In this document: in pieces, positions 389 to 12,164 of the stretch
How the letters are laid out: every line of letters starts with the position of its first letter
How positions within the stretch are numbered: the first letter of the stretch is position 1
Virus record (IMG/VR): IMGVR_UViG_3300035183_000733
Coordinates: 309,760-373,759 of that record
Strand: one strand, 5' to 3'
DNA: 64,000 nucleotides
Notes under the pieces: model-generated
Database searches by the model: none
The model's input: only the letters and a program-made list of their open reading frames with translations
Told to the model about the DNA's origin: nothing
Position numbers and translations under genes: made by a program

Positions 389-1021
389 ATGGAAGAAATA
401 AAGATACAGCAGACTGTTGCGGTCCTGGTGGACGGCAACAACATGGACAAGAGCGCTAACACCTTTGGTGAGTTCATGATGATGGATTACGACCGGTTGA
501 TACCGCGTCTTATAGGTAGGCGCAGTCTGTCAAAGTTCTTCTACCTCAGGGAGGGAAAGAAGATCTCGAAGAAGCTCGCCGAGAGATTACACAAGAATTT
601 TTACGGAATAGTCAAGCCATGCTACAAGAGTGCAGATGTGCCGCTAACTATAGAGGCGGTCCAGCTCGTTGACAAGGTTGACACCATAATAATCCTATCG
701 GGTGATTCCGATTACATGGAACTCGTCAAGTATTTGAGCGCTCGTGGTTGTAGGACCGAGATTGCCGCATTCAGGCACAGCGCATCGACGGCCCTCATAG
801 AGATGGCAGACTTCTACCACGAGATAACGGTGGATGACTGCTTCACTGTGGAGAAACACGGCAAGGATGAGCACGTGGAGTTTGCGCCGGAAATACACGG
901 TGACCTCGGGTTGGCTCCGAAGAAGAAACATGTCATCCTTCCGAAGGACACCAGGGTCGTTGACGTGACAAACCCGGCGTTAACCGAGAAGATACGGTTG
1001 TACGACGAGACCGATCGATAA
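389..1021 (+). CDS. NYN domain protein (LabA/DUF88, PIN-like fold)
   Basis: VAVLVDGNN, IIILSGDSDY, and SAS-x-LIEMADFY motifs typical of NYN. Confidence 0.85.
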   Translation: MEEIKIQQTVAVLVDGNNMDKSANTFGEFMMMDYDRLIPRLIGRRSLSKFFYLREGKKISKKLAERLHKNFYGIVKPCYKSADVPLTIEAVQLVDKVDTIIILSGDSDYMELVKYLSARGCRTEIAAFRHSASTALIEMADFYHEITVDDCFTVEKHGKDEHVEFAPEIHGDLGLAPKKKHVILPKDTRVVDVTNPALTEKIRLYDETDR

Positions 1022-1130
1022 TGCCTATGTGATTATTCTTGACAACGGCAACGAGACCAAGCGGAGGAGGAATAACTTTAAAACCGAAGAAGAAAATGTC
1101 AATAAAAATTAAGGAGGACAGACGGACAGG

Positions 1131-1637
1131 ATGATCGACAAGAGCTACATAGTGCACGACGACTATAACGTAAAGGGCTTCGACGGGAAGTACAGGTTCC
1201 TGTCCAATTTCTTCATGACACCGGTTTATTTCGAGGGCATCAAGTACCCGTCGAGCGAACACGCATATCAGGCCGCTAAGACAGAGGACCAGCCCACCAG
1301 AATGACTATGTTCCTGAACTGTACGGCTGGTGAAGCAAAGAAGAACGGCAGGATCGTAACCATTCGCGATGACTGGTCCAGGATAAAGTTCGACGTGATG
1401 AGCGTCATCGTGTTCGAAAAGTTCTACCGTAATATCGAATTGCGTCGTGAGTTGCTTGCAACTGGCAAGCGCCACCTCGAGGAGACAAACCACTGGAACG
1501 ATACCTATTGGGGTGTGTGCAATGGCAAAGGAGAAAATAACCTGGGCATAGTACTCATGGGCGTGAGGGCGTACTGGGGTTCCAAGTACCCGGAGCTGCT
1601 CGGCAAACCAGTGGCAAACATAAAACCTTTATTTTAA
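1131..1637 (+). CDS. NADAR (YbiA-like) ADP-ribosyl hydrolase family protein
   Basis: FLSNFF, SEHAYQAAK, W-x-x-IK-x-x-VM, WNDTYWG, GENNLG-x-x-LM motifs. Confidence 0.9.
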   Translation: MIDKSYIVHDDYNVKGFDGKYRFLSNFFMTPVYFEGIKYPSSEHAYQAAKTEDQPTRMTMFLNCTAGEAKKNGRIVTIRDDWSRIKFDVMSVIVFEKFYRNIELRRELLATGKRHLEETNHWNDTYWGVCNGKGENNLGIVLMGVRAYWGSKYPELLGKPVANIKPLF

Positions 1638-1647
1638 AATATGAGAC

Positions 1648-1926
1648 ATGGAACAGCCAGAAATAAAAATAAACGATTCGCTGGTGTGCAAGAACACTGC
1701 GCCACTTACCGGGAATGAGGTGGCACCGCCGCTCGAGATGGACAAGGATTACGAAGCAAAGAACGTGCACGTATGCGAGTGCGGACAAACGCACATCGAT
1801 GTGGGACTCAAGTCAGTTTACAACTGGATCCGTTGCTACAAGTGTGATACGCATCTCCCAAACGGAGATAGTGTCCACTGGTGTCATCCGAGCAGATTTC
1901 AAATAAAAAAGGCCATGTTACCATGA
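1648..1926 (+). CDS. Hypothetical protein with Cys-rich (CxCG...CxxC) putative Zn-binding motif
   Basis: VCECGQ and RCYKCD motifs. Confidence 0.65.
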   Translation: MEQPEIKINDSLVCKNTAPLTGNEVAPPLEMDKDYEAKNVHVCECGQTHIDVGLKSVYNWIRCYKCDTHLPNGDSVHWCHPSRFQIKKAMLP

Positions 1927-1950
1927 CCTATAAAAAATTAAAATTAAACT

Positions 1951-2202
1951 ATGGTGTTAATTATCATCATCACATACATAATAGGGTTCGTCTTGAATGT
2001 CGCGTTGTTCGCCACGTTCGGCAAGGCGATGGGGTTCGATTACAGCGCCCCCAAGGACTATTCTAATTGCGACGACTGGGACGGCAACGTCCAGGCGTAC
2101 ACTGCGTTCTCGTTAGGGTGGCCTATAATAGACACATTCCTTATCCTGTGGGGACTGTGGACCGCTCTGACAAAATTAACAGGGGTATTCGTTAAATCAT
2201 GA
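1951..2202 (+). CDS. Hypothetical membrane protein
   Basis: Two hydrophobic segments. Confidence 0.6.
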   Translation: MVLIIIITYIIGFVLNVALFATFGKAMGFDYSAPKDYSNCDDWDGNVQAYTAFSLGWPIIDTFLILWGLWTALTKLTGVFVKS

Positions 2203-2501
2203 AGCCGGAAGAAGGACAGAAAATTTACGTGCCCACCTCGCTGTATGTTTACAGGGGTGCGGACGATTTCGAGGGTGGCCTTGCCACCATCAACAAGATA
2301 GAACACAGTACGCATTTGCCAGAAGACCACTACAACTACACTATGGTCGGCATCAAAGAGAGGCCTGGTACTACTATGTATAACTGGAAGTATCTCATGG
2401 AGAACCAGGACAAGTGGCGCGAGGAATACGGCGATCGTATAGCGCATCCAGATCCTGACGAACGTCCGGAGTTCAACCAACCTAATGCGGATTGGAGATG
2501 A
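2199..2501 (+). CDS. Hypothetical protein
   Basis: ATGA overlap with upstream gene; protein-like composition. Confidence 0.65.
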   Translation: MKPEEGQKIYVPTSLYVYRGADDFEGGLATINKIEHSTHLPEDHYNYTMVGIKERPGTTMYNWKYLMENQDKWREEYGDRIAHPDPDERPEFNQPNADWR

Positions 2502-2843
2502 TGGAATTAACGGAGAAACAAATAAACTATATAAGTACGCTGGCATAGAGGACAAGATTCCTTCTGTGTGACCTACTTACGAGGCGGCTGCTATAGAGAT
2601 GGCGCAAGACCTATGCTACACATGGGATGCTCGCGAACCGGAACTTTATAGAGTGGCGTGTCTACTGGAGCTTAGGGTGCCAGGGTTAAAATTATCACAG
2701 CACCTGGACCCCACACACATAATAAAAAACATAACATTATAAAATACTCGATGGCAAAATAACTTCAAGAGCAAAGGTTACAGCGCAGAGGAGATCGCGG
2801 AGTATGGTAGCTACATCGAGTTGATTGAGGAGAAAATAAAATG
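2498..2843 (+). pseudogene. Remnants of one or two small genes broken by frameshifts/stops
   Basis: Protein-like pieces in different frames: MELTEKQINYISTLA; AAIEMAQDLCYTWDAREPELYRVACLLEL; NNFKSKGYSAEEIAEYGSYIELIEEKIK*. Confidence 0.4.
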
Positions 2844-3581
2844 AAAGTCTGGTTCATAAGCGACACACATTGCAAGCACATGTTTCTGGATATACCAGAC
2901 GGGGTTGATATGGCCATACATGCCGGGGACATGTCCAACTCGAAGGAACCGGCCGTCAACAACAACGAGGTACGCGATTTCCTCGAGTGGTACAAGTCAC
3001 TCACGCATATCAAGTACAAGGTGCTTATTGCCGGCAACCATGATACGTCCATAGAGAAGGGACTCGTCACGAGAGGGGACATACATGAGTCCATAACTTA
3101 TCTCGAGCACGAATACGCAGAGGTCGGCGGACTCAAGATATTCGGCAGCCCGTACACCCCGCAATTTGGGAAGGACTGGGCATTCAATGTGCCGCGCGGG
3201 TGCATCTCCTCGTATTGGGACGATATTCCAGAAGGTCTCGACATACTGATAACGCACGGCCCTCCCAAGGGAATACTCGACCTTACGCAGTACGACACGA
3301 GGGCTGGCGCGGATGGTCAGTCATTCTTCCAGTGCGGGTGCAAAGATATGTTGCGCGCGATAGCCAGGAAAAAACCGAGGTACCACGTGTTCGGTCACAT
3401 ACACCCAGAGGAGAACTGCCCAAATAGCGGCGCTCTGAATATACAGCATTGCGACACAACATTCATAAATGCTGCGGTGTGCAGCTTCGGTAAGTCTGTT
3501 TTTGACGGTGTCAAATTCAAGAACATACATAACAACGGGCACCTCTTTGAGATAAATAAACTGTCTGTGGAAAAATTTTAG
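2841..3581 (+). CDS. Calcineurin-like metallophosphoesterase
   Basis: ISDTH, HAGD, IAGNHD, LITHGPP, HVFGHIH motifs. Confidence 0.9.
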   Translation: MKVWFISDTHCKHMFLDIPDGVDMAIHAGDMSNSKEPAVNNNEVRDFLEWYKSLTHIKYKVLIAGNHDTSIEKGLVTRGDIHESITYLEHEYAEVGGLKIFGSPYTPQFGKDWAFNVPRGCISSYWDDIPEGLDILITHGPPKGILDLTQYDTRAGADGQSFFQCGCKDMLRAIARKKPRYHVFGHIHPEENCPNSGALNIQHCDTTFINAAVCSFGKSVFDGVKFKNIHNNGHLFEINKLSVEKF

Positions 3582-3614
3582 ACGGGGCGTGTACAACGGA
3601 ACAGATTATTTTCG

Positions 3615-3622
3615 TAATTTTG
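3615..3622 (+). promoter_or_regulatory. Bacteroidota-type -7 promoter element ahead of the leader/tRNA array
   Basis: TAATTTTG matches TAnnTTTG. Confidence 0.55.
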
Positions 3623-3684
3623 CTTCAGAATCCGAAACAAATAGGATATATAGGATATAACGTAAAACTTTAATACAGCAGAAA

Positions 3685-3777
3685 ATGTTCGCAACAATAA
3701 CAAAAGGGATGTACACAGGGACCACCTTCACAACGAAGAAGGATGGTAAAGTATTCTCCGGGATTTGCGAGTCATGA
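3685..3777 (+). CDS. Putative leader (attenuator) peptide MFATITKGMYTGTTFTTKKDGKVFSGICES
   Basis: 30 codons, below the ORF-track cutoff; 7 Thr, 4 Lys, 4 Gly, 2 Met, 1 ATA; overlaps the antiterminator arm. Confidence 0.7.
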   Translation: MFATITKGMYTGTTFTTKKDGKVFSGICES

Positions 3778-3813
3778 TGTGCTGAACAGTATACAAGATT
3801 CCTAAAATCCCGG
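3758..3813 (+). promoter_or_regulatory. Putative antiterminator hairpin
   Basis: CCGGGATTT (3758-3766) pairs with AAATCCCGG (3805-3813); GAGTC (3769-3773) pairs with GATTC (3797-3801). Confidence 0.7.
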
Positions 3814-3840
3814 TTAAAACAACCGGGATTTTTTGTTTTT
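3804..3840 (+). terminator. Intrinsic terminator directly upstream of the first tRNA
   Basis: AAAATCCCGGTT-AAAAC-AACCGGGATTTT followed by TTGTTTTT. Confidence 0.85.
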
Positions 3841-3844
3841 ATAC

Positions 3845-3916
3845 GCATCCGTAGCTCAATGGTAGAGCTCCCGGCTCTTAACCGGTAGGTTGAAGGTTCG
3901 AGTCCTTCCGGGTGCA
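3845..3916 (+). tRNA. tRNA-Lys(CTT)
   Basis: Cloverleaf; anticodon loop CT-CTT-AA; T loop TTCGAGT. Confidence 0.9.
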
Positions 3917-3940
3917 CAAAAGGTCTGGCGACCAAAATAT

Positions 3941-4021
3941 TGCGGGGTGACTGAAGATGGTATCAGGTAGGACTCATGATCCTATGCGCAAGCCTCGGAG
4001 GTTCGAGTCCTCCTCCCGCAC
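3941..4021 (+). tRNA. tRNA with CAT anticodon (Met or Ile2), 12-nt variable arm
   Basis: TAGGA-CTCATGA-TCCTA; variable region TGCGCAAGCCTC; GGAGG-TTCGAGT-CCTCC. Confidence 0.8.
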
Positions 4022-4025
4022 AAAT

Positions 4026-4073
4026 GCCGAGTTGAAAGGGAACGCACAGCCGGCGGGCTGCCCCTCGGCTCCA
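4026..4073 (+). ncRNA. Minihelix-like hairpin ending in T-CCA
   Basis: GCCGAG/CTCGGC closing stem, GGG/CCC and CAGCC/GGCTG inner stems, then TCCA. Confidence 0.35.
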
Positions 4074-4135
4074 ATTAGGGAATGACACTGCTGTGGTACA
4101 CCGAGGCAGTGAGGAAGACAGGAATCGGTGTTCAT

Positions 4136-4208
4136 GCGGGAGTAGCTCAGTTGGTAGAGCGTCACCTTGCCAAGGTGAAGGTCGCGGGTTCGAATCCCGT
4201 CCCCCGCT
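4136..4208 (+). tRNA. tRNA-Gly(GCC)
   Basis: Canonical cloverleaf; TCACC-TTGCCAA-GGTGA. Confidence 0.95.
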
Positions 4209-4210
4209 CA

Positions 4211-4301
4211 GTGGACAAGAATGGTCGGGGTTGCGATACCGATCACCCAATGAGAGAGGACCTCGAATCTCGCACAAGGTCATTATCTCACTTGTCCGCC
4301 A
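4211..4301 (+). ncRNA. Structured RNA motif, copy A (3-way junction)
   Basis: GTGGACAAG/CTTGTCCGC, TGGTCGG/CCGATCA, TGAGA/TCTCA, GACCT/AGGTC; homologous to 4816-4900 with compensatory changes. Confidence 0.7.
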
Positions 4302-4306
4302 CATTA

Positions 4307-4395
4307 AGTGGTTCTGTTGTCGTCGTTCATTATTGAGAAATTTAGAACTCGACAATCCAAAGTAAATCCTGGTAATAGGGTCCAGGAGAACCGCT
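4307..4395 (+). ncRNA. Putative structured spacer RNA
   Basis: AGTGGTTC/GAACCGCT closing stem enclosing GTTGTCG/CGACAAT and TCCTGG/CCAGGA hairpins. Confidence 0.45.
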
Positions 4396-4401
4396 GAACA
4401 T

Positions 4402-4473
4402 TGCGGAGAGGTTGTTGGTAACCTTCTGGTCTCATAAGCCTGGACCCCGGCAGTTCGATTCTGCCCTCCGTTA
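4402..4473 (+). tRNA. tRNA-Met(CAT), probably initiator
   Basis: 1:72 T/T mismatch, GGTCTCATAAGCC anticodon arm, GGCAG-TTCGATT-CTGCC. Confidence 0.8.
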
Positions 4474-4477
4474 CAAA

Positions 4478-4550
4478 GGACAAACTGATGTAGATCGTGA
4501 GACCGAAAGGCCGCCGGAGCCAAGGTGAAAATTCCCTTCAGTCCCTGTCT
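4478..4550 (+). ncRNA. Putative structured spacer RNA
   Basis: GGACA/TGTCT and ACTGA/TCAGT closing stems with internal GNRA-capped hairpins. Confidence 0.35.
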
Positions 4551-4559
4551 AAAATATTT

Positions 4560-4649
4560 GCGGGTGTCGCGTAGTTGGTCCATCGCACCAGCCTTCCAAG
4601 CTGGTCAGATAAGGTCAGATCGTGAGTTCGAATCTCACTACCCGCTCCA
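4560..4649 (+). tRNA. tRNA-Gly(TCC) with 17-nt variable region
   Basis: CCAGC-CTTCCAA-GCTGG; variable TCAGATAAGGTCAGATC; encoded CCA. Confidence 0.85.
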
Positions 4650-4733
4650 CGTTCTCTCTGGGTGACTATGAGATGTACCTGACTCTTAACCGCTGAACCT
4701 GGGACCAGTTGGAGGTAGCAAGTGGAGAGAACG
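4650..4733 (+). ncRNA. Putative structured spacer RNA
   Basis: CGTTCTCTC/GAGAGAACG 9-bp closing stem, TACCT/AGGTA inner stem. Confidence 0.45.
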
Positions 4734-4739
4734 TATTTT

Positions 4740-4813
4740 GCATGTAACGCATAAGTGGTGGTGCGCCAGCCTTCCAAGCTGGAACAGAGTCGGTTCGATC
4801 CCGACTACATGCT
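4740..4813 (+). tRNA. tRNA-Gly(TCC)
   Basis: GCATGTA/TACATGC acceptor; CCAGC-CTTCCAA-GCTGG. Confidence 0.9.
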
Positions 4814-4815
4814 CA

Positions 4816-4900
4816 GTGAACAAGATGATTGGGGTTATGCCAATCGTCCTATGAAAGAAGAAGCAGAATCTCACACTGCATCGATATTTCACCTGTTCAT
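4816..4900 (+). ncRNA. Structured RNA motif, copy B
   Basis: GTGAACA/TGTTCAT, TGATTGG/CCAATCG, TGAAA/TTTCA, GCAG/CTGC; loop GAATCTCACAC like copy A. Confidence 0.7.
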
Positions 4901-4903
4901 TAT

Positions 4904-4976
4904 GCTGCTGTAGTTCAGTCGGTGGAACACGTCCTTGGTAAGGACGAGGTCGCGGGTTCGATCCCCGCCGGTAGCT
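4904..4976 (+). tRNA. tRNA-Thr(GGT)
   Basis: Canonical cloverleaf; CGTCC-TTGGTAA-GGACG. Confidence 0.95.
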
Positions 4977-4978
4977 CG

Positions 4979-5161
4979 ATGAAGACAAGAGAGATAAAAA
5001 CGAGGCAGGTCGAACTATACGAGATAGATAAACCTGTCGAATATAAATTGAACGCTATGTCCGATTATTATTGCAAGATAATGGGCGGAAAATTTAAACC
5101 GTCTGTACAGTTCTCGATAACAACTTATCTTGAGCATACGGGCATTAAGAGAAGAATGTAA
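4979..5161 (+). CDS. Small hypothetical protein within the tRNA array (MKTREIKTRQ...)
   Basis: ATG just after tRNA-Thr; the ORF-track start at 4829 runs through RNA genes and is unlikely. Confidence 0.55.
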   Translation: MKTREIKTRQVELYEIDKPVEYKLNAMSDYYCKIMGGKFKPSVQFSITTYLEHTGIKRRM

Positions 5162-5164
5162 ATT

Positions 5165-5246
5165 GCCTGAGTGGCATCAGTGGTCGACTGCGCCTGCCTT
5201 GTAAGCAGGAACTCAAACAACGGGGGTTCGAATCCCTCCTCAGGCT
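5165..5246 (+). tRNA. tRNA-Thr(TGT) with 12-nt variable region
   Basis: CCTGC-CTTGTAA-GCAGG; variable AACTCAAACAAC. Confidence 0.9.
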
Positions 5247-5395
5247 CAAAAAATAATGGCAGATCCGCATGACCGTTTCGGATACTAATACCCAAAGGTC
5301 GTTAATCATGGGAGCCAAAAAATTTAAGAAACGAAAATGAAGCAGAAACGAAAATATAAACGGTAACGCCTTGCTGACTGCGAGGCATCAATCAT

Positions 5396-5468
5396 GCGCT
5401 CGTAGCAAACCGGTTGTAGGCAAATGGCTTTTAACCATTCAGGTCTGGTTCGACTCCAGACGGGCGCA
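5396..5468 (+). tRNA. tRNA-Lys(TTT)
   Basis: AATGG-CTTTTAA-CCATT; TCTGG-TTCGACT-CCAGA. Confidence 0.85.
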
Positions 5469-5492
5469 CAAATAAGAACGAAGTAAAATTTT

Positions 5493-5580
5493 GCGTCTGT
5501 TGCTCAGTTGGCCGAGAGCACCACACTTTTAATGTGGAGTGGGGTAACCACCATCGCAGGTTCGAATCCTGCCGGGCGCA
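5493..5580 (+). tRNA. tRNA-Lys(TTT) with long variable arm
   Basis: CCACA-CTTTTAA-TGTGG; variable AGTGG-GGTAA-CCAC-CATC. Confidence 0.9.
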
Positions 5581-5592
5581 CAAAATTTAAAC

Positions 5593-5683
5593 TGCCCCGT
5601 TCGCTTAGCTGGCCGAAAGTACCGGACTCTTAATCCGGAGAAGGTAACTTCCAACGTGGGTTCGAATCCCACCGGGGCAACCA
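5593..5683 (+). tRNA. tRNA-Lys(CTT) with long variable arm
   Basis: CCGGA-CTCTTAA-TCCGG; variable AGAAG-GTAA-CTTC-CAAC; encoded CCA. Confidence 0.9.
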
Positions 5684-5696
5684 AAATGTATGAACG

Positions 5697-5963
5697 ATGG
5701 AATGTAACGTAGAACGCGAGCTCAGAGAGCGGCTCGTGAATTTCAGGAGGATCTGGGTGCACTACACTCGCCTCGGCTCTCTGTGTGTTACGCTCTTCCC
5801 GGCGGAACCGCACTCTCAGTACCGGATAGTCACCAGGCAGAAACTCGGCGACCGCATCTGGCGCAGGACGAAGACCACTGACGAGAACGGCAACGAGACC
5901 GTGCTCAAGGAGCTGGACGTTGACCTGATCGAGAGAATTGTGAGGGAAGACTTAGCGCTGTGA
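5697..5963 (+). CDS. Hypothetical protein; last codons overlap the next tRNA
   Basis: 88-aa ORF with coding-like codon usage. Confidence 0.6.
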   Translation: MECNVERELRERLVNFRRIWVHYTRLGSLCVTLFPAEPHSQYRIVTRQKLGDRIWRRTKTTDENGNETVLKELDVDLIERIVREDLAL

Positions 5964-6036
5964 CCAGAGATGGTATTGGACCTCCCTCATAAGGAGGCGC
6001 GGAAACGCATCGCCGGTTCGAGTCCGGCCAGCGCTA
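5954..6036 (+). tRNA. tRNA with CAT anticodon (Met or Ile2), long variable arm
   Basis: AGCGCTG/CAGCGCT acceptor; CCTCC-CTCATAA-GGAGG; variable CGCG-GAAA-CGC-ATC. Confidence 0.85.
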
Positions 6037-6214
6037 CAAGTTAGTTCTAAATTTTGTATATTGCCAGTAACTGTTTGATTACAGATAACTAAAACTAAAA
6101 AGGAAAAAATATGTTTTTAATAGGATTCTCAGGTATTGCCCCGCTACGAGAGCTACTGTCAGTAAGTAAAAACAACAGAAGGGAAGGCTTCTGAATTTAT
6201 AATTTAAAAACTAA

Positions 6215-6489
6215 ATGACAATGGAAAAGAAATTAGGGAAAATTGAAAGCGTAACCTTTGGACACGGAGGAAATGTGCTTGGGATGCCGAAATGATTAAG
6301 TGGGACAAAAATTGCAAATGGACAGAAGCCGACAGAGATAAGCAATACGCTGAGATTATGCGTTACCTATCAAAATTATTAAAGGAGGCAAAAGTTGATA
6401 GTGTTGATAAATTAAAAGGTGTGCCGATTGAAGCAACTTTTGATGGCAATATGCTAAAGGAGTGGAGAATTTTGACGGAAGTTATTTAG
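6215..6489 (+). pseudogene. Conserved phage hypothetical gene with internal deletion and frameshift near 6270
   Basis: MEKKLGKIESVTFGHGG in one frame joins KCAWDAEMIKWDKNCKWTE...LLKEAKVDSVDKLKGVPIE in another. Confidence 0.6.
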
Positions 6490-6712
6490 TACACAGGTGA
6501 GCTGGGTTGTTTTTATTTCTTCTTAGCCCGTGTTATATTTTCGGTTGCTTTTCGCAACTGGAATATAACGGTCGGGTGTTTATGAAGTTGGGGCATTCAA
6601 GGCTCTAATGTTCATACAACCACCGAAGTAAAATAGTAGCACAAAGGCTGAGTGCTTAGTTATCAGCCCTAAGCCCTAATTTTGTTAGCGGTTCGTGGTA
6701 GTTGTAAAAAAA

Positions 6713-6744
6713 TTTGGTTGTTACGATATTTATACGTATCTTTG
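6713..6744 (+). promoter_or_regulatory. Bacteroidota sigma-70-type promoter
   Basis: TTTG (6713-6716), 20-nt spacer, TATCTTTG (6737-6744) = -33/-7 consensus. Confidence 0.75.
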
Positions 6745-6748
6745 TCGT

Positions 6749-6988
6749 ATGGAAAATATAAAAGTAAAAAATTTGAAACGTGGTTATGGTGTAAACCATT
6801 CAAAACATGGCTACATTCAATATCGTGGACTTGCAACAAAACACCCTTATACAGATGAGCCAAAAGTACCACATAGATATGTATTTTGGCCTGCAATAGA
6901 TGAAGACGGTAAAGCATTGCCTGATGTTGTTTTGACAGATGGTAATGAAATTGTTGAACTGGTTGATAAATATGAGGAGGTGGAATGA
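6749..6988 (+). CDS. Hypothetical protein (MENIKVKNLKRG...)
   Basis: ATG just downstream of the promoter; AT-rich. Confidence 0.6.
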   Translation: MENIKVKNLKRGYGVNHSKHGYIQYRGLATKHPYTDEPKVPHRYVFWPAIDEDGKALPDVVLTDGNEIVELVDKYEEVE

Positions 6989-7374
6989 GAATAGAAATTA
7001 ACCTTATAGACATGAAGAACGCTCAAGGACAAATTGACAGGAAAGGCAGGAACACAATGAACATGAAGAGACTACGCGAGCTGAAGGATCAGTTCGTGAC
7101 AGAGAATTACGGCAATGACAGCATGACGAGCGATGTGGTGGCGGTGGCGGCCATAGACAAGTTCTTTAATTTCGTGAAGGCAAAGGAGAAGGAATGTAGG
7201 GCCAACGATTTCAAGCCGGACCCGTCCCCAATGATCGGAACCAACCCGTTCCGCAAGGACGCTGTTAGCGACGGTGACCACCTTTTTATACCCCCGACGG
7301 AAACGGACCGTGGTTCCATGGACGAACGTTTTAACCGCCTGCTCAACTACAGGGTTGAGACCTCGGTGGAATAA
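6985..7374 (+). CDS. Hypothetical protein
   Basis: ATGA overlap; 129 aa. Confidence 0.6.
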   Translation: MRIEINLIDMKNAQGQIDRKGRNTMNMKRLRELKDQFVTENYGNDSMTSDVVAVAAIDKFFNFVKAKEKECRANDFKPDPSPMIGTNPFRKDAVSDGDHLFIPPTETDRGSMDERFNRLLNYRVETSVE

Positions 7375-7397
7375 ATATCCAGATAAATAGATTAAGA

Positions 7398-7478
7398 GGT
7401 GACCGAAGGGGAGCATGCTTCCCTGGCAAATATCCGAGCGCGTCCTCGCCTTAAGTCCGTAAATAGGGGCTGGTCACC
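7398..7478 (+). ncRNA. Putative structured RNA directly upstream of tRNA-Thr(CGT)
   Basis: GGTGACC/GGTCACC closing stem, AGGGGAGC/GCTTCCCT hairpin. Confidence 0.45.
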
Positions 7479-7483
7479 AACTT

Positions 7484-7559
7484 GCCGATGTAGTTCAGCT
7501 GGTAGAACGTCGGTATCGTAAACCGAAAGTCGCAGGTTCGAATCCTGTCATCGGCTCCA
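7484..7559 (+). tRNA. tRNA-Thr(CGT)
   Basis: Canonical cloverleaf; TCGGT-ATCGTAA-ACCGA; encoded CCA. Confidence 0.95.
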
Positions 7560-7573
7560 AAAATTATTACGGT

Positions 7574-7699
7574 ATGGAGTTCAAGGAGCTGGAGATAATA
7601 AAGATTGAGACGGAGGATCGGTTCTTCGTCACCGACCAGGGTGAGCTCGGTATAGAAATGCAGATAACAGTGCTGCCGAGTGGCAGCGTGATTGAATAA
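7574..7699 (+). CDS. Small hypothetical protein (41 aa)
   Basis: MEFKELEIIKIETEDRFFVTDQG... with coding-like usage. Confidence 0.45.
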   Translation: MEFKELEIIKIETEDRFFVTDQGELGIEMQITVLPSGSVIE

Positions 7700-7714
7700 C
7701 AAAAACAAAAAGCC

Positions 7715-8306
7715 ATGAAAAAAGAATCGGTAGTTCTTGAGATACGTGCGGCGGCCGGTAGAGATGATGCAAAACTTCTTGTAGAAGAAATGACGTCTAT
7801 TTATCGCAAAGCCGCCATCTGGCTCTCACCGTTGGACTCGAATACCCCCTACGGAGAAGAGAGGCAGGGTCCAGACGAGCATCGTCACGGTGGCAGTCAT
7901 GGACGATAAACCACAACAAAACTTCGTGCTAAACCGCAACGACGTCGACCGCAAGTACTGCAGGTCTGGCGGCAAGGGCGGGCAAAAGGTGAACAAGGTC
8001 GAGACTTGCGTCGTGCTCACGCATATTCCGTCCAGCATGCAGGTCAGGTCGGAGGAGCACAGGACGCGCGAGAAGAACGAGGCCGCGGCCTGGGAACGCC
8101 TGGAGGACAAGCTGCGGGCCATCCACGACAACGGGGAGGGCCGCAAGATCCAGGGCATCCGCAACTCGCAGATAGGCACCGGAGAGCGCAACGACAAGCG
8201 CAGGACCTACCGGGACCAGGACGGCTACGTCATCGACCACGTCACAGGGAAACGGATTACGATGAAGGACCTGTATAAGGGGAACATCGGAGGTCTCCAC
8301 GTGTAA
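7715..8306 (+). pseudogene. RF1-like class I peptide release factor homologue (no N-terminal domain), split by deletion plus frameshift near 7815
   Basis: Frame 2: VVLEIRAAAGRDDAKLL; frame 3: SGSHRWTRIPPTEKRGRVQTSIVTVAV, SGGKGGQKVNK (GGQ at 7977-7985), GERNDKRRTY. Confidence 0.85.
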
Positions 8307-8313
8307 AAGTATT

Positions 8314-8580
8314 ATGGATATAGAGATGGTTTACATACAGCACTGCGACCTGCCGGAGTGCGCGCTCGGGACTGCCGAGTGGGACTGCCCGAGTTGTGGA
8401 GGACACAACATCGAGTACGACGATTTCTTTTACGAGGAGTACGAAAAGGAACACAAGGGTGAGCTTTGCTGCGATTGGTGCCGGGCAGAATTTGAAGTTG
8501 AGAAAAAAGAATACGGTATTTACAATATTAAAAAGGAGGTAAACAATGAGCAATTGGAAAGTAATAAAGACAAAGATTGA
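8314..8580 (+). CDS. Hypothetical Zn-finger protein
   Basis: CPSCG and CDWC motifs. Confidence 0.6.
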   Translation: MDIEMVYIQHCDLPECALGTAEWDCPSCGGHNIEYDDFFYEEYEKEHKGELCCDWCRAEFEVEKKEYGIYNIKKEVNNEQLESNKDKD

Positions 8581-9625
8581 GGTGTTCGATCACCCGGATG
8601 CGGCGAAACTGCAAATCGGAAAGATTGGCACATACCAGGTAGTTGTGCAGAAGGGACTGTACAACGGTGGTGAGGACGTGGTATTCGCTCCCGAGAAGTC
8701 CATCCTGAACGGTGAGCTTGAGAAGGAGTACAAGAACTACCTGCACGGTCCTGATAAGAACAGGGTTGGTTCTATTCGTTTGAGAGGTGAGCTATCTTGT
8801 GGTATCATCATACCTAACGAGCTTGTGTTCGCGCAGTGCGGTAAGCACATAAGCGAGCTGCCTAACGACGAGGACCTGTCGGAGATTCTTGGTATAACCA
8901 AGTACGTGCCGAGGGTTCCTTCCGAGATGGAGGGCGTGGCGGTTCCTATCGAGTACGACAACTTCTCGATAAAGCACGACGTCGAACAGTTCGGTGTTTA
9001 CGCTGCTGACTTCGTGGACGGGGAGCGTGTCGTGATAACGGAGAAGCTGCACGGGTCGCAGCTCGTGGCATACATCTCTGTGCACAACGACAACCAGGTT
9101 AAGGCAAAGTGGGTGTCTACCAAGAACTACAACGCCGAGGGCTTGTGCCTTGTGGAGAGCGATACCAACTTCTACTGGATGGCGGTTAACGATATAGGGT
9201 TATTCTCCAACATACTGGACTTGCTGCCCAATCTGTCCGCCCTCGCCGGGCTCAGCTCCGGCGATGAGATGGTGGTGCAGGTGTTCGGTGAGGGTATTCC
9301 TTGTCAGGCCATGAAGTATGGTTTCGTCAACCCGACTATGAAGATATTCGGTGTGACGATAAACGGAAAGACATATCCTTACGATCAGCTTCCGGAGTAC
9401 TTCAGAAAGAATTGGGTTCCTGTTCTGTACGACGGACCTTACGAGAACGTGCCGGAGCTCAAGAAGCTTGCGCTCGGTAACGAGAAGGTGTCCGGCCAGG
9501 AGCTGCACATTAAGGAGGGCATTGTAATAACTCCTTACGAGGTGCGCAGGGCCAAGGACGGGACATGGCTGAAAGTTAAGGTGATTAACCCGAAATACAA
9601 GGAGACAGGCGAAGAATTTTCGTAA
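8546..9625 (+). CDS. ATP-dependent RNA ligase (DRB0094/Rnl2-like)
   Basis: N-terminal OB-like domain (HPDAAKLQI...RLRGELSCG), motif I TEKLHGS, motif III FGEG, motif IV KEGIVI, motif V LKVINPKY. Confidence 0.88.
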   Translation: MSNWKVIKTKIEVFDHPDAAKLQIGKIGTYQVVVQKGLYNGGEDVVFAPEKSILNGELEKEYKNYLHGPDKNRVGSIRLRGELSCGIIIPNELVFAQCGKHISELPNDEDLSEILGITKYVPRVPSEMEGVAVPIEYDNFSIKHDVEQFGVYAADFVDGERVVITEKLHGSQLVAYISVHNDNQVKAKWVSTKNYNAEGLCLVESDTNFYWMAVNDIGLFSNILDLLPNLSALAGLSSGDEMVVQVFGEGIPCQAMKYGFVNPTMKIFGVTINGKTYPYDQLPEYFRKNWVPVLYDGPYENVPELKKLALGNEKVSGQELHIKEGIVITPYEVRRAKDGTWLKVKVINPKYKETGEEFS

Positions 9626-9649
9626 ATCTACAAGGATTTAAGTGTACGT

Positions 9650-9961
9650 ATGTGTAAAGTAATAAATATAAAAGATAAAGGTGACGAATCAAATTTTGTG
9701 TATATCGGGAGACCTACAAAATTTGGCAACCCGTATTCGCACAGGGAGGGAACGCTCGCCGAGTTCAGGGTTGCGTCAAGGAAGGAAGCGCTCGAGAAGT
9801 ACGAGAAGTACCTATTATCGAATCCCTCGCTGATGGAATCCCTGCACGAACTGAAGGGAAAGACCCTGGTGTGCTGGTGCAAACCCAAGGCTTGTCATGG
9901 GGATATTTTAAAAAAATACGTGGATAAACTCGAAAAAGGTTTACCTGCGACGTTGTTCTAA
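9650..9961 (+). CDS. DUF4326 domain protein
   Basis: VYIGRPTKFGNPY, LKGKTLVCWCKPKACHGDIL. Confidence 0.9.
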   Translation: MCKVINIKDKGDESNFVYIGRPTKFGNPYSHREGTLAEFRVASRKEALEKYEKYLLSNPSLMESLHELKGKTLVCWCKPKACHGDILKKYVDKLEKGLPATLF

Positions 9962-10188
9962 AGATAAATAGATTATGAACTTTGAACCTGAATACAGGAT
10001 GGAATCGTTGACGAAAAAACAATATGAGCGCGCTATCAAATCAAAGTGGCGTAGACTGCGTTTTTGCGCGCGACTTCGTATTGCGTATCGCTCACTGGGG
10101 GCGGCGCACGATCTATCGGTCACACCCGATAGGAATATAAGAGGGTAGGAGAGACCCTCGAATTTCTCTCCAAAACAAGCATAGGAAT

Positions 10189-10704
10189 ATGAAAGTGTTT
10201 AAGAAGTTTGGAGAGGAGCAAGTGCCGGATCTGGCAGCATACGTCAAGGACTACGTATCTCTCCACAAGGATGTAACAATAATGGTAGGCTGTGACGCGG
10301 CCGATTCTGGATGGTACCTGAGGTACTGTACTGTCGTTCTATTGCGCCACGAGGGCAAGGGAGCGCACTTTTTGTTTTACAAGGATTCGGTCAAGAAGAG
10401 TTCGCCTAAGAAGCTGCAGACTCCAGACGAGATATTCATGAAGATCTGGGGCGAGGTGGAGCGTATATTTGAAGTGGCCGAGTACCTCGAGACAGAGCTG
10501 ACGAAGTCTGGCGTGTACGAGTATGCACGTAAGCCGGGGTACAAGTTGGTCGAAACCCACGTCGACATCAACCCGGACCCGCACGAGGGCTCGCACCTGG
10601 TGTACAACGCCGCCACTGGATTCTTCTCCGGTTCGGGTTACATCGTCAAGGCCAAGCCTTGGGCATGGGCCTCGACTTGCGCAGCTGACATGCTGCTCAG
10701 GTAG
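10189..10704 (+). CDS. RNase H-like YkuK (DUF458) family protein
   Basis: IMVGCD, YCTVVLL...GKGAH, ETHVDIN, KAKPWAWASTCAAD. Confidence 0.8.
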   Translation: MKVFKKFGEEQVPDLAAYVKDYVSLHKDVTIMVGCDAADSGWYLRYCTVVLLRHEGKGAHFLFYKDSVKKSSPKKLQTPDEIFMKIWGEVERIFEVAEYLETELTKSGVYEYARKPGYKLVETHVDINPDPHEGSHLVYNAATGFFSGSGYIVKAKPWAWASTCAADMLLR

Positions 10705-11014: not shown

Positions 11015-11896
11015 ATGACAAGAACAATGGAAATAGCGTTGACACCAGCGCACGAAAAAGTAGTCGGCAAATTAGCAGCCAACGAGCCTTACAATAAGAA
11101 GGCAATCCTCGACAGAACAGCGATGATCTCTGTTAAGAAGGAAGGCGGAGTAATCGTTACCCGCGACAAGGGCAACATCGTATCTAAGTTCCGCCCGAGC
11201 AAGATCTACGAAATCGTAGACTTCAATGATGCGGTAAAAACTTTGCTGTCGGTTATTGACGGCATATTCAACCCTGAGTTCTACAACATCACGGTTAAAG
11301 CCGGGTACCAGGAGCTTAAGCTTCGCGGCAAGTCGCACAAGATCAACGGGGACGTGTTCCACGAGATGGTGTGGTTGACAAACAGCACCGACGGTACAAA
11401 GCGTCTTTCAATCCGTTATGGATTGATGCGCCAGTGGTGCTCTAACGGTGCGGTGATGACTTACAAGGGATCATCGTTCCGGGTGAAACACCTGACGACT
11501 AATAACGTTAACGAGGAATTGAAGGCGTTCATGCTGCAATTGCCTAAGCTTGACGTTACAAAAACAATCAAGCGCTTAAAAAGCATTGGTGGCAAAACCA
11601 TCACGGTGCGCGAGTTGTCCGACTCGTTGGTAAACAAAATCGGCAAGAAGGGCAACGATACCATTTGGAAGTTGCTTGTCGACAAGATGGCCTCTTCGAA
11701 GACCGACAGAATCGGCACCAAGGAGGACGCGCTCATCACAGGCATCAAAGTACCTTTCAATGAAATGACCAAAGAAACGCTGGACACTCCATTGGACAGC
11801 TGGAAGGTATTCAACTGCTACACCGAGCTTTGGAGAAGCTTGGACGCAGGGGAGATCGAGCGCGAGACCAACAAGATCCTTGAAATCCTTAACTAA
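11015..11896 (+). CDS. DUF932-family protein
   Basis: LTNSTDG...YGLMRQWCSNG...HLT motif. Confidence 0.7.
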   Translation: MTRTMEIALTPAHEKVVGKLAANEPYNKKAILDRTAMISVKKEGGVIVTRDKGNIVSKFRPSKIYEIVDFNDAVKTLLSVIDGIFNPEFYNITVKAGYQELKLRGKSHKINGDVFHEMVWLTNSTDGTKRLSIRYGLMRQWCSNGAVMTYKGSSFRVKHLTTNNVNEELKAFMLQLPKLDVTKTIKRLKSIGGKTITVRELSDSLVNKIGKKGNDTIWKLLVDKMASSKTDRIGTKEDALITGIKVPFNEMTKETLDTPLDSWKVFNCYTELWRSLDAGEIERETNKILEILN

Positions 11897-11904
11897 GTAA
11901 TAAC

Positions 11905-11933
11905 GGAGGGGGTGGAAGTCCCCCTCCATTTTT
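11905..11933 (+). terminator. Intrinsic terminator
   Basis: GGAGGGGG/CCCCCTCC stem followed by ATTTTT. Confidence 0.75.
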
Positions 11934-12164
11934 AATACGCCAATGAAAAAACAAACCATAGGAGAGCCAAGGCCGACCTCCACAATGAAAGAACTATTTG
12001 TGACATCGACTTAAAGGTCACGGAAAGAGGTACTAAAGGGCGGCATCTACAAGATGGGCTCGAACATATTCAAGCTCTCCCATTGGAATGATACGCGCGA
12101 AAATGAGGCGTGGATGTCTCCATCATAAAAATCATAAACGTACGTACGATAAATAGAAGTCCAG

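What the first reader, a model, noticed from the sequence alone, without database searches (positions are those of the whole stretch)
4211..4900. Two covarying copies of an unrecognised RNA motif, each directly 3' of a tRNA-Gly
Seen: copy A (4211-4301) follows tRNA-Gly(GCC) and copy B (4816-4900) follows tRNA-Gly(TCC), both after the same CA linker. Shared fold: P1 GTGGACA/TGTCCGC vs GTGAACA/TGTTCAT; P2 TGGTCGG/CCGATCA vs TGATTGG/CCAATCG; P3 TGAGA/TCTCA vs TGAAA/TTTCA, with true compensatory G-C to A-T changes. Conserved unpaired GGTT (L2) and GAATCTCRCAC (terminal loop) could form a kissing GGTT/AATC contact. Copy A ends in a 7-bp stem plus G-CCA. Inference: a functional ncRNA family (tRNA mimic, processing element or ribozyme) analogous to the stable non-tRNA RNAs in the T4 tRNA cluster; I cannot match it to a family I know.
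Basis: partly seen in the sequence, partly recalled or inferred. Interest (0 to 1): 0.8.

Follow-up and report, generated by a model that had tools for sequence, protein, structure and literature searches.

The report
Structured RNA cassette behind tRNA-Gly genes
Two diverged copies of an ~87-nt three-stemmed RNA of no known family sit directly behind two glycine tRNA genes in a giant phage; compensating mutations keep the fold, but close relatives lack it and its job is unknown.

Summary
Copy A (4211-4299) and copy B (4816-4900) each start 2 nt after the discriminator of a tRNA-Gly. They are clearly homologous (about 69% identity; global score z about 9.7). Both fold into the same three-way junction (P1, P2, P3-P4). 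97.9% of pair cells are standard pairs and 5 pairs changed on both sides, against 26-42% paired when partners are slid. The + strand, shared with the tRNAs, folds better than the - strand.

Nothing in Rfam matches, even at E<=10. It is not a tRNA, and its topology excludes the HDV-like theta ribozymes known at phage tRNA 3' ends.

New finding: the window is the end of a 374-kb jumbo myovirus. Its Lys/Met/Gly/Thr-only tRNA array has the same gene order in related phages, but those lack the motif. Site A holds 3 nt or a homing-endonuclease-like ORF; site B holds unrelated spacers. Only near-identical relatives carry it, and collection scans found no other copy.

So it is a real, selected, lineage-restricted accessory RNA cassette, one of several unclassified structured spacer modules in this array. 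The ribozyme, tRNA-mimic and kissing-loop ideas remain untested.

The parts
4136..4210 (+). tRNA-Gly(GCC), with discriminator T4208 and the CA (4209-4210) that precedes motif A
   Evidence: ARAGORN; Rfam tRNA 70.3 bits; sequence
4211..4299 (+). Motif copy A, whole unit (89 nt three-way junction)
   Evidence: MFE fold -32.9 kcal/mol, z -3.1; pair counts; absent from the orthologous site in L006, L010 and L004
4211..4217 (+). A: P1 5' strand (pairs with 4293-4299; can extend to 9 bp, 4211-4219 with 4291-4299)
4222..4245 (+). A: P2 hairpin (stem 4222-4228 with 4239-4245; loop L2 4229-4238 starting GGTT). 4222-4252 is 61% identical, ungapped, to tRNA variable-loop/T-arm/acceptor-3' segments
4251..4290 (+). 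A: P3 (4251-4255 with 4286-4290), internal loop, P4 (4259-4263 with 4277-4281), terminal loop 4264-4276 containing GAATCTCGCAC
4293..4299 (+). A: P1 3' strand. The following CA makes a G-CCA-like tail that is present only in this copy
4308..4394 (+). S1: a different three-way-junction spacer RNA conserved in all relatives. Motif A is inserted between tRNA-Gly(GCC) and S1
   Evidence: alignment and covariation; its own model R2 hits only the S1 copies
4740..4815 (+). tRNA-Gly(TCC), with discriminator T4813 and the CA (4814-4815) that precedes motif B
4816..4900 (+). Motif copy B, whole unit (85 nt): P1 4816-4822 with 4894-4900; P2 4826-4832 with 4840-4846 (L2 4833-4839); P3 4852-4856 with 4887-4891; P4 4860-4864 with 4878-4882; terminal loop 4865-4877 containing GAATCTCACAC
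   Evidence: MFE fold -25.2 kcal/mol, z -3.2; pair counts; pattern match
4904..4977 (+). tRNA-Thr(GGT), starting 3 nt after motif B. This leaves no room for further 3' ribozyme elements in copy B

Best explanation
The motif is a genuine small RNA gene module of 85-89 nt. It is a compact three-way junction: a closing stem P1, hairpin P2, and a bipartite hairpin P3-P4 whose 3' strand abuts P1.

It is most likely transcribed on the + strand as part of the polycistronic tRNA array of a 374-kb jumbo myovirus. It is one of several structured cassettes that fill the spacers of this array, each beginning 0-5 nt after the N73-CA end of the upstream tRNA. These cassettes are swapped, gained or lost between related phages, probably by recombination in the conserved flanking tRNA genes.

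Shown: the fold, its maintenance by compensatory change after the two copies diverged, its strand bias, its exact placement behind two tRNA-Gly genes, and its presence/absence polymorphism.

Inferred mechanism: host tRNA-processing enzymes cut the transcript at the tRNA borders. RNase Z or RNase P-type cleavage would act at the tRNA-Gly 3' side, and RNase P at the next tRNA's 5' end. This frees both the CCA-less tRNA-Gly, which a phage CCA-adding enzyme would then complete, and a nuclease-resistant ~90-nt RNA.

My best guess for its role is an accessory, tRNA-processing-dependent small RNA. It would either help define the tRNA-Gly 3' end, with the 12-14 bp P1+P3 coaxial helix acting as an acceptor/T-arm-like handle, or act in trans in the tRNA-centred counter-defence programme encoded around it. 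It is dispensable for the array as such.
For: Fold and selection:
- Both copies give the same MFE fold.
- 97.9% of cells are paired, 5 pairs changed on both sides and 4 through G-U, against 26-42% paired in slid controls.
- Paired and unpaired columns are equally diverged (67% and 66% identical), so the stems were kept by compensation and not simply by recent copying.
- The + strand is more stable than the - strand (-32.9 vs -29.6 and -25.2 vs -21.0 kcal/mol).

Transcription unit:
- All tRNAs and neighbouring ORFs are on the + strand.
- No + strand promoter-like site lies inside the array. The only terminator-like hit inside it on the + strand is a weak 5-bp hairpin at 4298-4312.

Placement:
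- Both junctions are identical (GCTCA then GTG) and both follow a tRNA-Gly. For 2 copies among 13 tRNAs, 3 of them Gly, P = 0.038.

Cassette behaviour:
- The motif is absent at site A in L006/L007/L008, L010 and L004, where the site holds 3 nt or a PDDEXK_5 ORF.
- Site B holds unrelated 185-199 nt spacers in L006, L014 and L015.
- A soil relative (X3) is 100% identical over 3802-3919 and carries motif A, yet has 87 extra letters at 3919/3937 and a different Met-Gly spacer.

Other spacers are conserved structured RNAs too: S1, X and Y.

Context: an RNA ligase, metallophosphoesterase, NYN RNase and RF-1/ArfB-like protein lie in the window, and a CCA-adding enzyme family gene lies in relatives.
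Against: - There is no expression or end-mapping evidence. The only RNA-library contig over the motif (X27, 4224-4355) runs on into the next spacer and may be DNA carry-over.
- Only two independent sequences exist, so covariation statistics are thin (5-10 of 500 shuffles reach the observed values).
- Relatives do without the motif, so any role in tRNA-Gly maturation cannot be essential.
- The tRNA-like features are loose. The Rfam tRNA model gives no hit at E<=10, and the G-CCA tail is in copy A only.
- The loop-loop contact is unsupported by covariation and is not rare by chance.
Confidence: 0.5

Rival explanations
1. It is a new class of self-cleaving ribozyme that cuts at its own 5' edge, between A4210 and G4211 (A4815 and G4816 in copy B). 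That would trim the tRNA-Gly 3' trailer, as HDV-like theta ribozymes do in gut phages.
For: - The motif starts 2 nt after the discriminator, within the +/-5 nt window described for theta ribozymes (PMC10879173).
- That paper reports that ribozyme-bearing phages are enriched for a CCA-adding enzyme and a DRB0094-family RNA ligase. This phage lineage carries a PF09414 RNA ligase (8546-9625) and a PF01743 gene (L004).
- A metallophosphoesterase lies next to the array; whether it could act on cyclic-phosphate RNA ends is not known.
- A compact junction with conserved loops is typical of small ribozymes.
Against: - No hit to any Rfam ribozyme family at E<=10.
- The hammerhead core motifs are absent by eye.
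- Unpaired positions are no better conserved than paired ones, unlike a catalytic core.
- Relatives mature the same tRNA-Gly without the motif.
Confidence: 0.1
2. It is a selfish mini-element (MITE-like, or a by-product of homing-endonuclease traffic) that inserts at the GCTCA end of tRNA-Gly genes. The stems would then be terminal inverted repeats or ssDNA/RNA structures needed for mobility, with no benefit to the phage.
For: - The conserved unit coincides exactly with the closing inverted repeat P1 (9 bp).
- The left junction is identical at two different tRNA-Gly genes.
- It is present or absent as a clean indel.
- The same site in L004 holds a free-standing PDDEXK_5 ORF.
- Cassette content differs even between near-identical phages.
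Against: - Only two copies exist in the whole 373,759-bp contig, by four pattern scans.
- Target-site duplication is unconvincing: CA/CA in copy A, and only with a shifted end in copy B.
- I saw no transposase among the ORFs scanned or in the Pfam listing of the locus around the array; most of the window's ORFs were not scanned.
- The G-U pairs make the structure strand-specific.
- About 31% divergence between the copies with compensated stems argues for long-term selection on the fold, not recent transposition.
- The polymorphism is explained equally well by homologous recombination in the flanking tRNA genes.
Confidence: 0.15
3. It is a tRNA-derived relic, rearranged from T-arm-containing tRNA fragments, that persists as a neutral structured spacer.
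For: - 4222-4252 is 61% identical, ungapped, to variable-loop/T-arm/acceptor-3' segments of the array's tRNAs (family D2).
- TCGAATCTCGC in the terminal loop matches the T-loop plus T-stem of the tRNA at 4560-4649 in 10 of 11 positions.
- A weak nhmmer similarity (E about 7) to the tRNA-Lys(TTT) 3' half in relatives.
- The array and its relatives contain other aberrant tRNA-like pieces, for example L010 4627-4711 and the L014 346-544 spacer.
Against: - No tRNA-model hit at E<=10, and no call from ARAGORN in standard, intron or mitochondrial mode.
- The present fold is not the cloverleaf.
- Nine substituted pairs remain paired between A and B, which neutral decay would not produce.
Confidence: 0.1
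4. It is a tRNA-elbow or minihelix mimic that acts as a decoy or sponge for a host tRNA-binding defence factor, such as an acceptor-end or anticodon-directed toxin.
For: - The array holds only Lys, Met, Gly and Thr tRNAs. Gly and Thr are the substrates of the toxSAS FaRel2 (PMC11559606). From my own knowledge, tRNA-Lys is the target of PrrC and PARIS, and initiator tRNA-Met of VapC and AtaT.
- It sits in an island of RNA-repair and counter-defence genes.
- P1+P3 can stack into a 12-14 bp helix, and copy A ends in G-CCA.
Against: - The CCA-like tail and the 7+5 bp register are not conserved in copy B.
- The P1 sequence does not carry the FaRel2 determinants (G1-C72, C2-G71, G4-C69, R5-Y68) in either register.
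- There is no direct evidence of any kind.
Confidence: 0.1

Closest known systems
T4 RNAC and RNAD (species 1 and 2 RNAs) in the T4 tRNA gene region
   Same: Small non-tRNA RNAs encoded inside a phage tRNA cluster, on the same strand as the tRNAs. Their biological role is unknown (PMC3014915).
   Different: No detectable sequence similarity: blastn of both copies against 50,697 GenBank phage records at E<=10 gave nothing relevant. The element here is duplicated, each copy sits exactly behind a tRNA-Gly, and it is polymorphic between close relatives.
Theta (minimal HDV-like) ribozymes at the 3' ends of phage tRNAs (Kienbeck et al. 2024, PMC10879173)
   Same: A structured RNA within a few nt of a CCA-less phage tRNA 3' end. 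The genomes also carry a CCA-adding enzyme and a PF09414/DRB0094-type RNA ligase.
   Different: The fold is a simple three-way junction closed by P1. There is no nested double pseudoknot, no internal P1 3' strand followed by P1.1/P4/J4-2, and no room for these in copy B. No Rfam HDV-family hit at E<=10.
The other structured spacer modules of the same array (S1 4308-4394, X 4650-4739, and M1 in L006/L004)
   Same: The same architecture: a closing stem beginning 0-5 nt after the upstream tRNA's N73-CA, two inner hairpins, the 3' hairpin abutting the closing stem, an AU-rich linker to the next tRNA, and covarying stems.
   Different: No detectable sequence or model-level homology. In the relatives that cover their sites, S1 (L004, L006, L010) and X (L006, L010, L014) are always present, whereas the motif is found only in this lineage.
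tRNA-linked passenger RNAs released by tRNA processing: the E. coli glyW-cysT-leuZ 3'ETS sponge RNA and the MHV68 tRNA-miRNA (TMER) units (from my own knowledge, not tested here)
   Same: A functional small RNA that owes its ends to RNase P/Z/E cuts at an adjacent tRNA.
   Different: Unrelated sequences and organisms. Release and function are inferred here, not shown.
Purine-riboswitch-type aptamers (three-way junction with kissing hairpin loops)
   Same: The overall architecture only: P1 closing stem, two hairpins, possible loop-loop contact.
   Different: No Rfam hit, different junction sequences, and no expression platform or downstream gene, since the element is flanked by tRNAs.

Membership tests
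tRNA (RF00005) | Cloverleaf with D, anticodon and T arms, scored by a covariance model | tested here: not met
   No tRNA hit over 4211-4299 or 4816-4900 at gathering score or at E<=10. ARAGORN in standard, intron and mitochondrial modes calls nothing there.
HDV-like / theta ribozymes | Location within about 5 nt of a tRNA 3' end | tested here: met
   The motif starts 2 nt after the discriminator of each tRNA-Gly; criterion from PMC10879173.
HDV-like / theta ribozymes | Nested double pseudoknot: the P1 3' strand is internal and is followed by P1.1, P4, J4/2 with the catalytic C, and the P2 3' strand | tested here: not met
   The only partner of the 5' strand lies at the 3' end of the conserved unit. 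In copy B only TAT separates it from tRNA-Thr. No HDV-family Rfam hit at E<=10.
Hammerhead, twister, twister-sister, hatchet, pistol and hairpin ribozymes | Match to the family covariance model or conserved catalytic core | tested here: not met
   cmscan of 3600-7700 against all 4227 Rfam families at E<=10 lists none of them. By eye, the J2/3-P3 stretch reads AAUGAGAG in place of the hammerhead CUGAUGAG core.
Self-cleaving ribozyme of any class | Site-specific self-cleavage in vitro | not testable with these tools
   Needs a transcription and cleavage assay.
Non-tRNA small RNAs of phage tRNA clusters (T4 RNAC/RNAD type) | Encoded within a phage tRNA gene cluster on the tRNA strand | tested here: met
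   a phage with terminase and tail sheath genes, a 13-tRNA array, all on the + strand.
Non-tRNA small RNAs of phage tRNA clusters (T4 RNAC/RNAD type) | Sequence homology to T4 RNAC or RNAD | tested here: not met
   blastn of both copies against GenBank phages at E<=10 gave no match for A and only short chance matches for B.
Non-tRNA small RNAs of phage tRNA clusters (T4 RNAC/RNAD type) | Accumulates as a discrete stable RNA | tested here: inconclusive
   Public runs hold only assembled contigs of near-identical relatives, with no end information. One RNA-library contig spans 4224-4355.
MITE / IS-derived miniature element | Terminal inverted repeats | tested here: met
   P1 is a 7-9 bp inverted repeat at the exact ends of the conserved unit.
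MITE / IS-derived miniature element | Target-site duplication, and multiple dispersed copies | tested here: not met
   The flanks are CA/CA in copy A but CA/TT in copy B. Only 2 copies exist in the 373,759-bp contig, both behind a tRNA-Gly.

The most novel reading that the evidence does not exclude
The motif, together with S1, X and M1, may represent an undescribed class of tRNA-array 'punctuation' RNAs. These would be interchangeable three-way-junction modules that start right at the tRNA 3' end and direct cleavage there, either by mimicking an RNase P/Z substrate or by new self-cleaving chemistry. They would so mature CCA-less, defence-evading phage tRNAs, and might double as stable decoy RNAs.
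Probability: 0.15. Interest if true: 0.8.

Novelty: new variant of a known kind. Interest (0 to 1): 0.45.

Why it matters
Phage tRNA arrays are now seen as counter-defence tools, yet the RNA between the tRNAs is usually ignored. Here the spacers of a Lys/Met/Gly/Thr-only array are packed with structured modules kept by covariation. At least four are unclassified, and one of them, this motif, is duplicated and polymorphic.

If these modules set tRNA 3' ends or act as decoys, they would add an RNA layer to tRNA-based counter-defence. They would also extend the theta-ribozyme precedent to other folds.

If they are only selfish or neutral cassettes, they still mark recombination hot spots that shuffle tRNA arrays. 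For the motif alone the reach is modest: one phage lineage and two sequences.

Tried and rejected
- Known RNA families: Rfam at gathering score over the whole window, at E<=10 over 3600-7700, and on the relatives' arrays. Only tRNAs were found.
- tRNA in disguise: ARAGORN in standard, intron and mitochondrial modes found nothing.
- More copies or homologues with model R1: none in the window beyond A and B, and none in L003-L015, in the 16 metagenome, 9 genome and 79+1 viral candidate loci. L042 is an identical contig that carries both copies, as does the source contig.
- Six DNA-pattern scans: four of viral contigs with motif patterns, one of metagenome contigs and one of genome contigs. Only the source contig was real.
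- An S1-anchored viral scan to fetch relatives' arrays found only the source contig.
- nhmmer and blastn of the motif against all the fetched relatives' loci found nothing below E about 0.4. blastn against GenBank phages found nothing.
- Protein anchors next to the motif: the 60-aa ORF at 4979-5161 has no homologue beyond itself. The array-internal 88-aa ORF gave three relatives, all without the motif.
- Homology to S1: the S1 model R2 does not hit A or B.
- Mini-ORF inside the motif (ATG at the P2 5' strand to TGA in P3; 10 and 9 codons; the L2 indel is 3 nt). Rejected because there is no Shine-Dalgarno in copy B, the substitutions are spread evenly over codon positions, and an in-frame open stretch this short is expected by chance.
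- Loop-loop contact as evidence: rejected as proof, because there is no covariation and 17% of shuffled loops match as well.
- Internal promoter or terminator: none convincing.
Full report
WHAT IS THERE

The window carries a dense + strand tRNA array at 3845-6037, plus one more tRNA at 7484. tRNA-Gly(GCC) at 4136-4209 and tRNA-Gly(TCC) at 4740-4814 are each followed by discriminator T, then CA, then a unit that begins GTG. Copy A is 4211-4299 and copy B is 4816-4900. B is followed after 3 nt by tRNA-Thr(GGT). A is followed after 8 nt by another structured spacer, S1 (4308-4394).

A and B align end to end at about 69% identity. The global score is 82, against 13.4 +/- 7.1 in 2000 shuffles.

Each copy folds on its own into the same three-way junction:
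- P1 is a closing stem of 7-9 bp.
- P2 is a hairpin of 7-9 bp.
- P3 (5 bp), an internal loop, P4 (5-7 bp) and a 9-13 nt terminal loop form the third arm.

IS IT MORE THAN CHANCE?

On the common structure 97.9% of pair cells are standard pairs. Five of 24 pairs changed on both sides and four more changed through G-U. Sliding the 3' partners by 1-3 columns drops pairing to 26-42% with almost no double changes.

Paired and unpaired columns are equally diverged (32/48 and 27/41 identical). The stems therefore survived about 31% divergence by compensation, not because the copies are young.

The + strand folds better than its complement (-32.9 vs -29.6 and -25.2 vs -21.0 kcal/mol, with z about -3.1 vs -1.5 to -1.8). 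This fits an RNA made in the tRNA direction.

With only two sequences the statistics stay thin: 5-10 of 500 shuffles reach the observed values. The proposed L2/terminal-loop contact is possible (GGGGUU with AAUCUC, 6 bp including two G-U). Both partners are invariant, however, and 17% of shuffled loop pairs do as well. The G-CCA tail is in copy A only. The 'CA linker' is a general property of the tRNA genes in this array and its relatives.

WHAT IT IS NOT

- No Rfam family matches either copy at gathering score or at E<=10.
- ARAGORN sees no tRNA there in any mode.
- Theta ribozymes (HDV-like, within 5 nt of phage tRNA 3' ends; PMC10879173) are the obvious precedent. Their nested double pseudoknot cannot be drawn here. 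The only partner of the 5' strand is the 3' end of the unit, and in copy B just 3 nt remain before the next tRNA.
- The hammerhead core is absent, and no other small-ribozyme model scores.

GENOMIC SETTING

The window is the last 64 kb of IMGVR_UViG_3300035183_000733, a 373,759-bp contig from a microbial mat metagenome. It encodes an intein-bearing large terminase and an 897-aa tail sheath, so this is a jumbo myovirus.

The genes around the array form an RNA-repair and counter-defence island:
- NYN RNase, NADAR, metallophosphoesterase, RF-1/ArfB-like protein, PF09414 RNA ligase, DUF4326 and an RNase H-like protein in the window.
- Further genes upstream, downstream or in relatives: NAMPT plus NUDIX, a CCA-adding enzyme family gene, a 2'-5' RNA ligase/Acb1-like gene and ART-PolyVal.

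The 13 tRNAs read only Lys, Met, Gly and Thr codons. Six of them have long variable regions.

COMPARISON WITH RELATIVES

Homologues of the adjacent phosphoesterase and of an 88-aa ORF inside the array led to contigs of related phages. L004, L006/L007/L008, L010 and L013-L015 carry the same tRNA order. The motif is missing in all of them.

Site A:
- In L006 and L010, GCTCA is followed by 3 nt and then S1.
- In L004 the same position holds a 120-aa PDDEXK_5 ORF.

Site B:
- L006, L014 and L015 have unrelated spacers of 185-199 nt.
- L010 has a rearranged order.

Only near-identical relatives (97-99% identity) carry motif A between tRNA-Gly(GCC) and S1. They appear as short contigs in soil and wastewater runs. 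One of them (X3) is 100% identical over 3802-3919. Yet it has 87 extra letters where the window keeps only a stub (3918-3940), and it has a different Met-Gly spacer.

Spacer cassettes therefore assort independently between very close phages. Recombination in the conserved flanking tRNA genes is the simplest explanation.

SEARCH FOR THE FAMILY ELSEWHERE

- Four motif-pattern scans of IMG/VR, one of JGI metagenome contigs and one of GTDB genomes returned only the source contig plus chance matches. Model R1 rejected all the chance matches.
- blastn against GenBank phages found nothing.
- nhmmer and blastn against all the fetched relatives' loci found nothing.
- Within the whole 374-kb genome there are exactly two copies, both behind a tRNA-Gly (P = 0.038 by position alone).

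THE MOTIF IS ONE OF SEVERAL MODULES

Other spacers of the array are also structured RNAs unknown to Rfam:
- S1 (4308-4394) is present in all relatives that cover its site. P1 and P3 covary, P2 is hypervariable, and the junction and loop are invariant.
- X (4650-4739) has five compensatory pairs across four phages.
- Y (about 5267-5325) has two substitutions in 59 nt.
- M1 is present in L006, L004 and L124.

The modules with a closing stem (S1, X, M1 and the motif) begin 0-5 nt after the upstream tRNA's N73-CA and end in an AU-rich linker before the next tRNA. The motif shares this plan but no detectable homology with the others.

Parts of the motif look tRNA-derived. The stretch 4222-4252 is 61% identical, ungapped, to T-arm regions. 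Its terminal loop repeats the T-loop/T-stem string of the tRNA at 4560-4649.

HOW IT MOST LIKELY WORKS

The following is shown:
- a selected, strand-specific fold;
- exact placement behind two tRNA-Gly genes;
- cassette-like gain and loss.

The rest is inferred. The array is one transcript. Host RNase P cuts at each tRNA 5' end. The CCA-less tRNAs are cut at or just after the discriminator and completed by the CCA-adding enzyme. The closed, compact motif would survive as a ~90-nt RNA.

I rate 'accessory, processing-released structured small RNA' at about 0.5. Within that, a cis role as a 3'-end handle (the P1+P3 coaxial helix of 12-14 bp) and a trans role in the tRNA-centred counter-defence programme are about equally plausible.

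The rivals are:
- a new self-cleaving ribozyme (0.1);
- a selfish mini-element (0.15);
- a neutral tRNA-derived relic (0.1);
- a tRNA-mimic decoy (0.1).

None of these can be settled without RNA end mapping and cleavage assays.

COMPARISON WITH WHAT IS KNOWN, AND VERDICT

By location the motif belongs with the non-tRNA RNAs of phage tRNA clusters. These are T4 RNAC/RNAD, whose roles are unknown (PMC3014915), and the theta ribozymes. It is a member of neither by sequence or fold.

It is a new variant of a known kind. It is real and unclassified, but narrow in distribution and optional. The interest is moderate for the motif itself. The array as a whole is the more striking object: toxin-target tRNAs, odd long-arm tRNAs, and at least four novel structured spacers that are shuffled between relatives.

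Noticed in passing
window 4308-4394 (also L006 11517-11599, L004 12100-12179, L010 4338-4418): S1 is a conserved three-way-junction RNA that follows tRNA-Gly(GCC) in all three other phage lineages whose contigs cover the site. P1 and P3 covary, P2 is hypervariable but always paired, and J2/3 (CCAAAGUAAAU) is invariant; the P3 loop (UAAUAGGGU) differs at one position in L010. It has no Rfam match.
   Followed up: partly
window 4650-4739 (also L006 11834-11929, L010 4712-4806, L014 181-270): Element X is a spacer RNA with a 9-12 bp closing stem that begins right at the upstream tRNA-Gly 3' end. Five pairs show compensatory changes across four phages. It has no Rfam match.
   Followed up: partly
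window about 5267-5325 (also in L006 and L010): Element Y is a 59-nt stretch with only two substitutions among phages whose neighbouring proteins are 67-78% identical. It is predicted to be structured and is unclassified.
   Followed up: partly
window 3845-6037 and 7484-7559: The 13-tRNA array reads only Lys (4), Met (3), Gly (3) and Thr (3) codons, and the order is conserved in relatives. Six tRNAs have long variable regions (81-91 nt: 3941-4021, 4560-4649, 5165-5247, 5493-5581, 5593-5683, 5954-6037), which is unusual for these anticodons. Most of the genes end N73+CA rather than CCA. The set overlaps the known targets of tRNA-directed toxins (Gly and Thr: FaRel2, PMC11559606).
   Followed up: partly
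window 389-3581 and 7890-10704; L041 and L004 upstream: The array sits in an RNA-repair and counter-defence island: NYN RNase, NADAR, metallophosphoesterase, RF-1/ArfB-like protein, PF09414 RNA ligase, DUF4326 and an RNase H-like protein. Upstream lie NAMPT plus NUDIX genes and, in relatives, a PF01743 CCA-adding enzyme family gene. Downstream lie a 2'-5' RNA ligase/Acb1-like gene, ART-PolyVal and an APS kinase.
   Followed up: partly
L004 11694-12099 (ORF 11736-12098): A relative carries a 120-aa PDDEXK_5 (homing-endonuclease-like) ORF exactly where the window has motif A. The position just after tRNA-Gly(GCC) is therefore an insertion hot spot.
   Followed up: partly
window 3918-3940, against L006 11081-11156, L004, L124 and soil run X3: The window keeps only a ggtc..gacc stub of M1, a ~75-nt three-way-junction element. 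M1 is present between tRNA-Lys(CTT) and tRNA-Met in relatives, including a relative that is 100% identical in the flanking 118 nt.
   Followed up: partly
window 4979-5161: A 60-aa orphan ORF fills the spacer between tRNA-Thr(GGT) and tRNA-Thr(TGT). Relatives have only 8-17 nt there. No homologue was found among 5.8 billion proteins.
   Followed up: yes
window 3620-3840: A noncoding leader upstream of the first tRNA is conserved (conservation seen in L124). It ends in a 12-bp hairpin plus T-run (3804-3840) only 5 nt before tRNA-Lys; the hairpin and T-run are also kept in L004, L006 and L010. This may be an attenuator or a processing signal for the array.
   Followed up: no
window 16929-20759: The large terminase gene (1276 aa) is interrupted by intein/Hint and LAGLIDADG homing-endonuclease domains.
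   Followed up: no
L014 346-544; L006 12005-12189; L010 4627-4711: The site-B spacers of relatives contain aberrant tRNA-like pieces. L014 has a T arm plus an acceptor-like closing stem around a large insert. L010 has a tRNA-Gly(TCC)-like gene with an enlarged D region. L006 and L014 share a GGGGAGAAC...GTTCCCGAC core.
   Followed up: no
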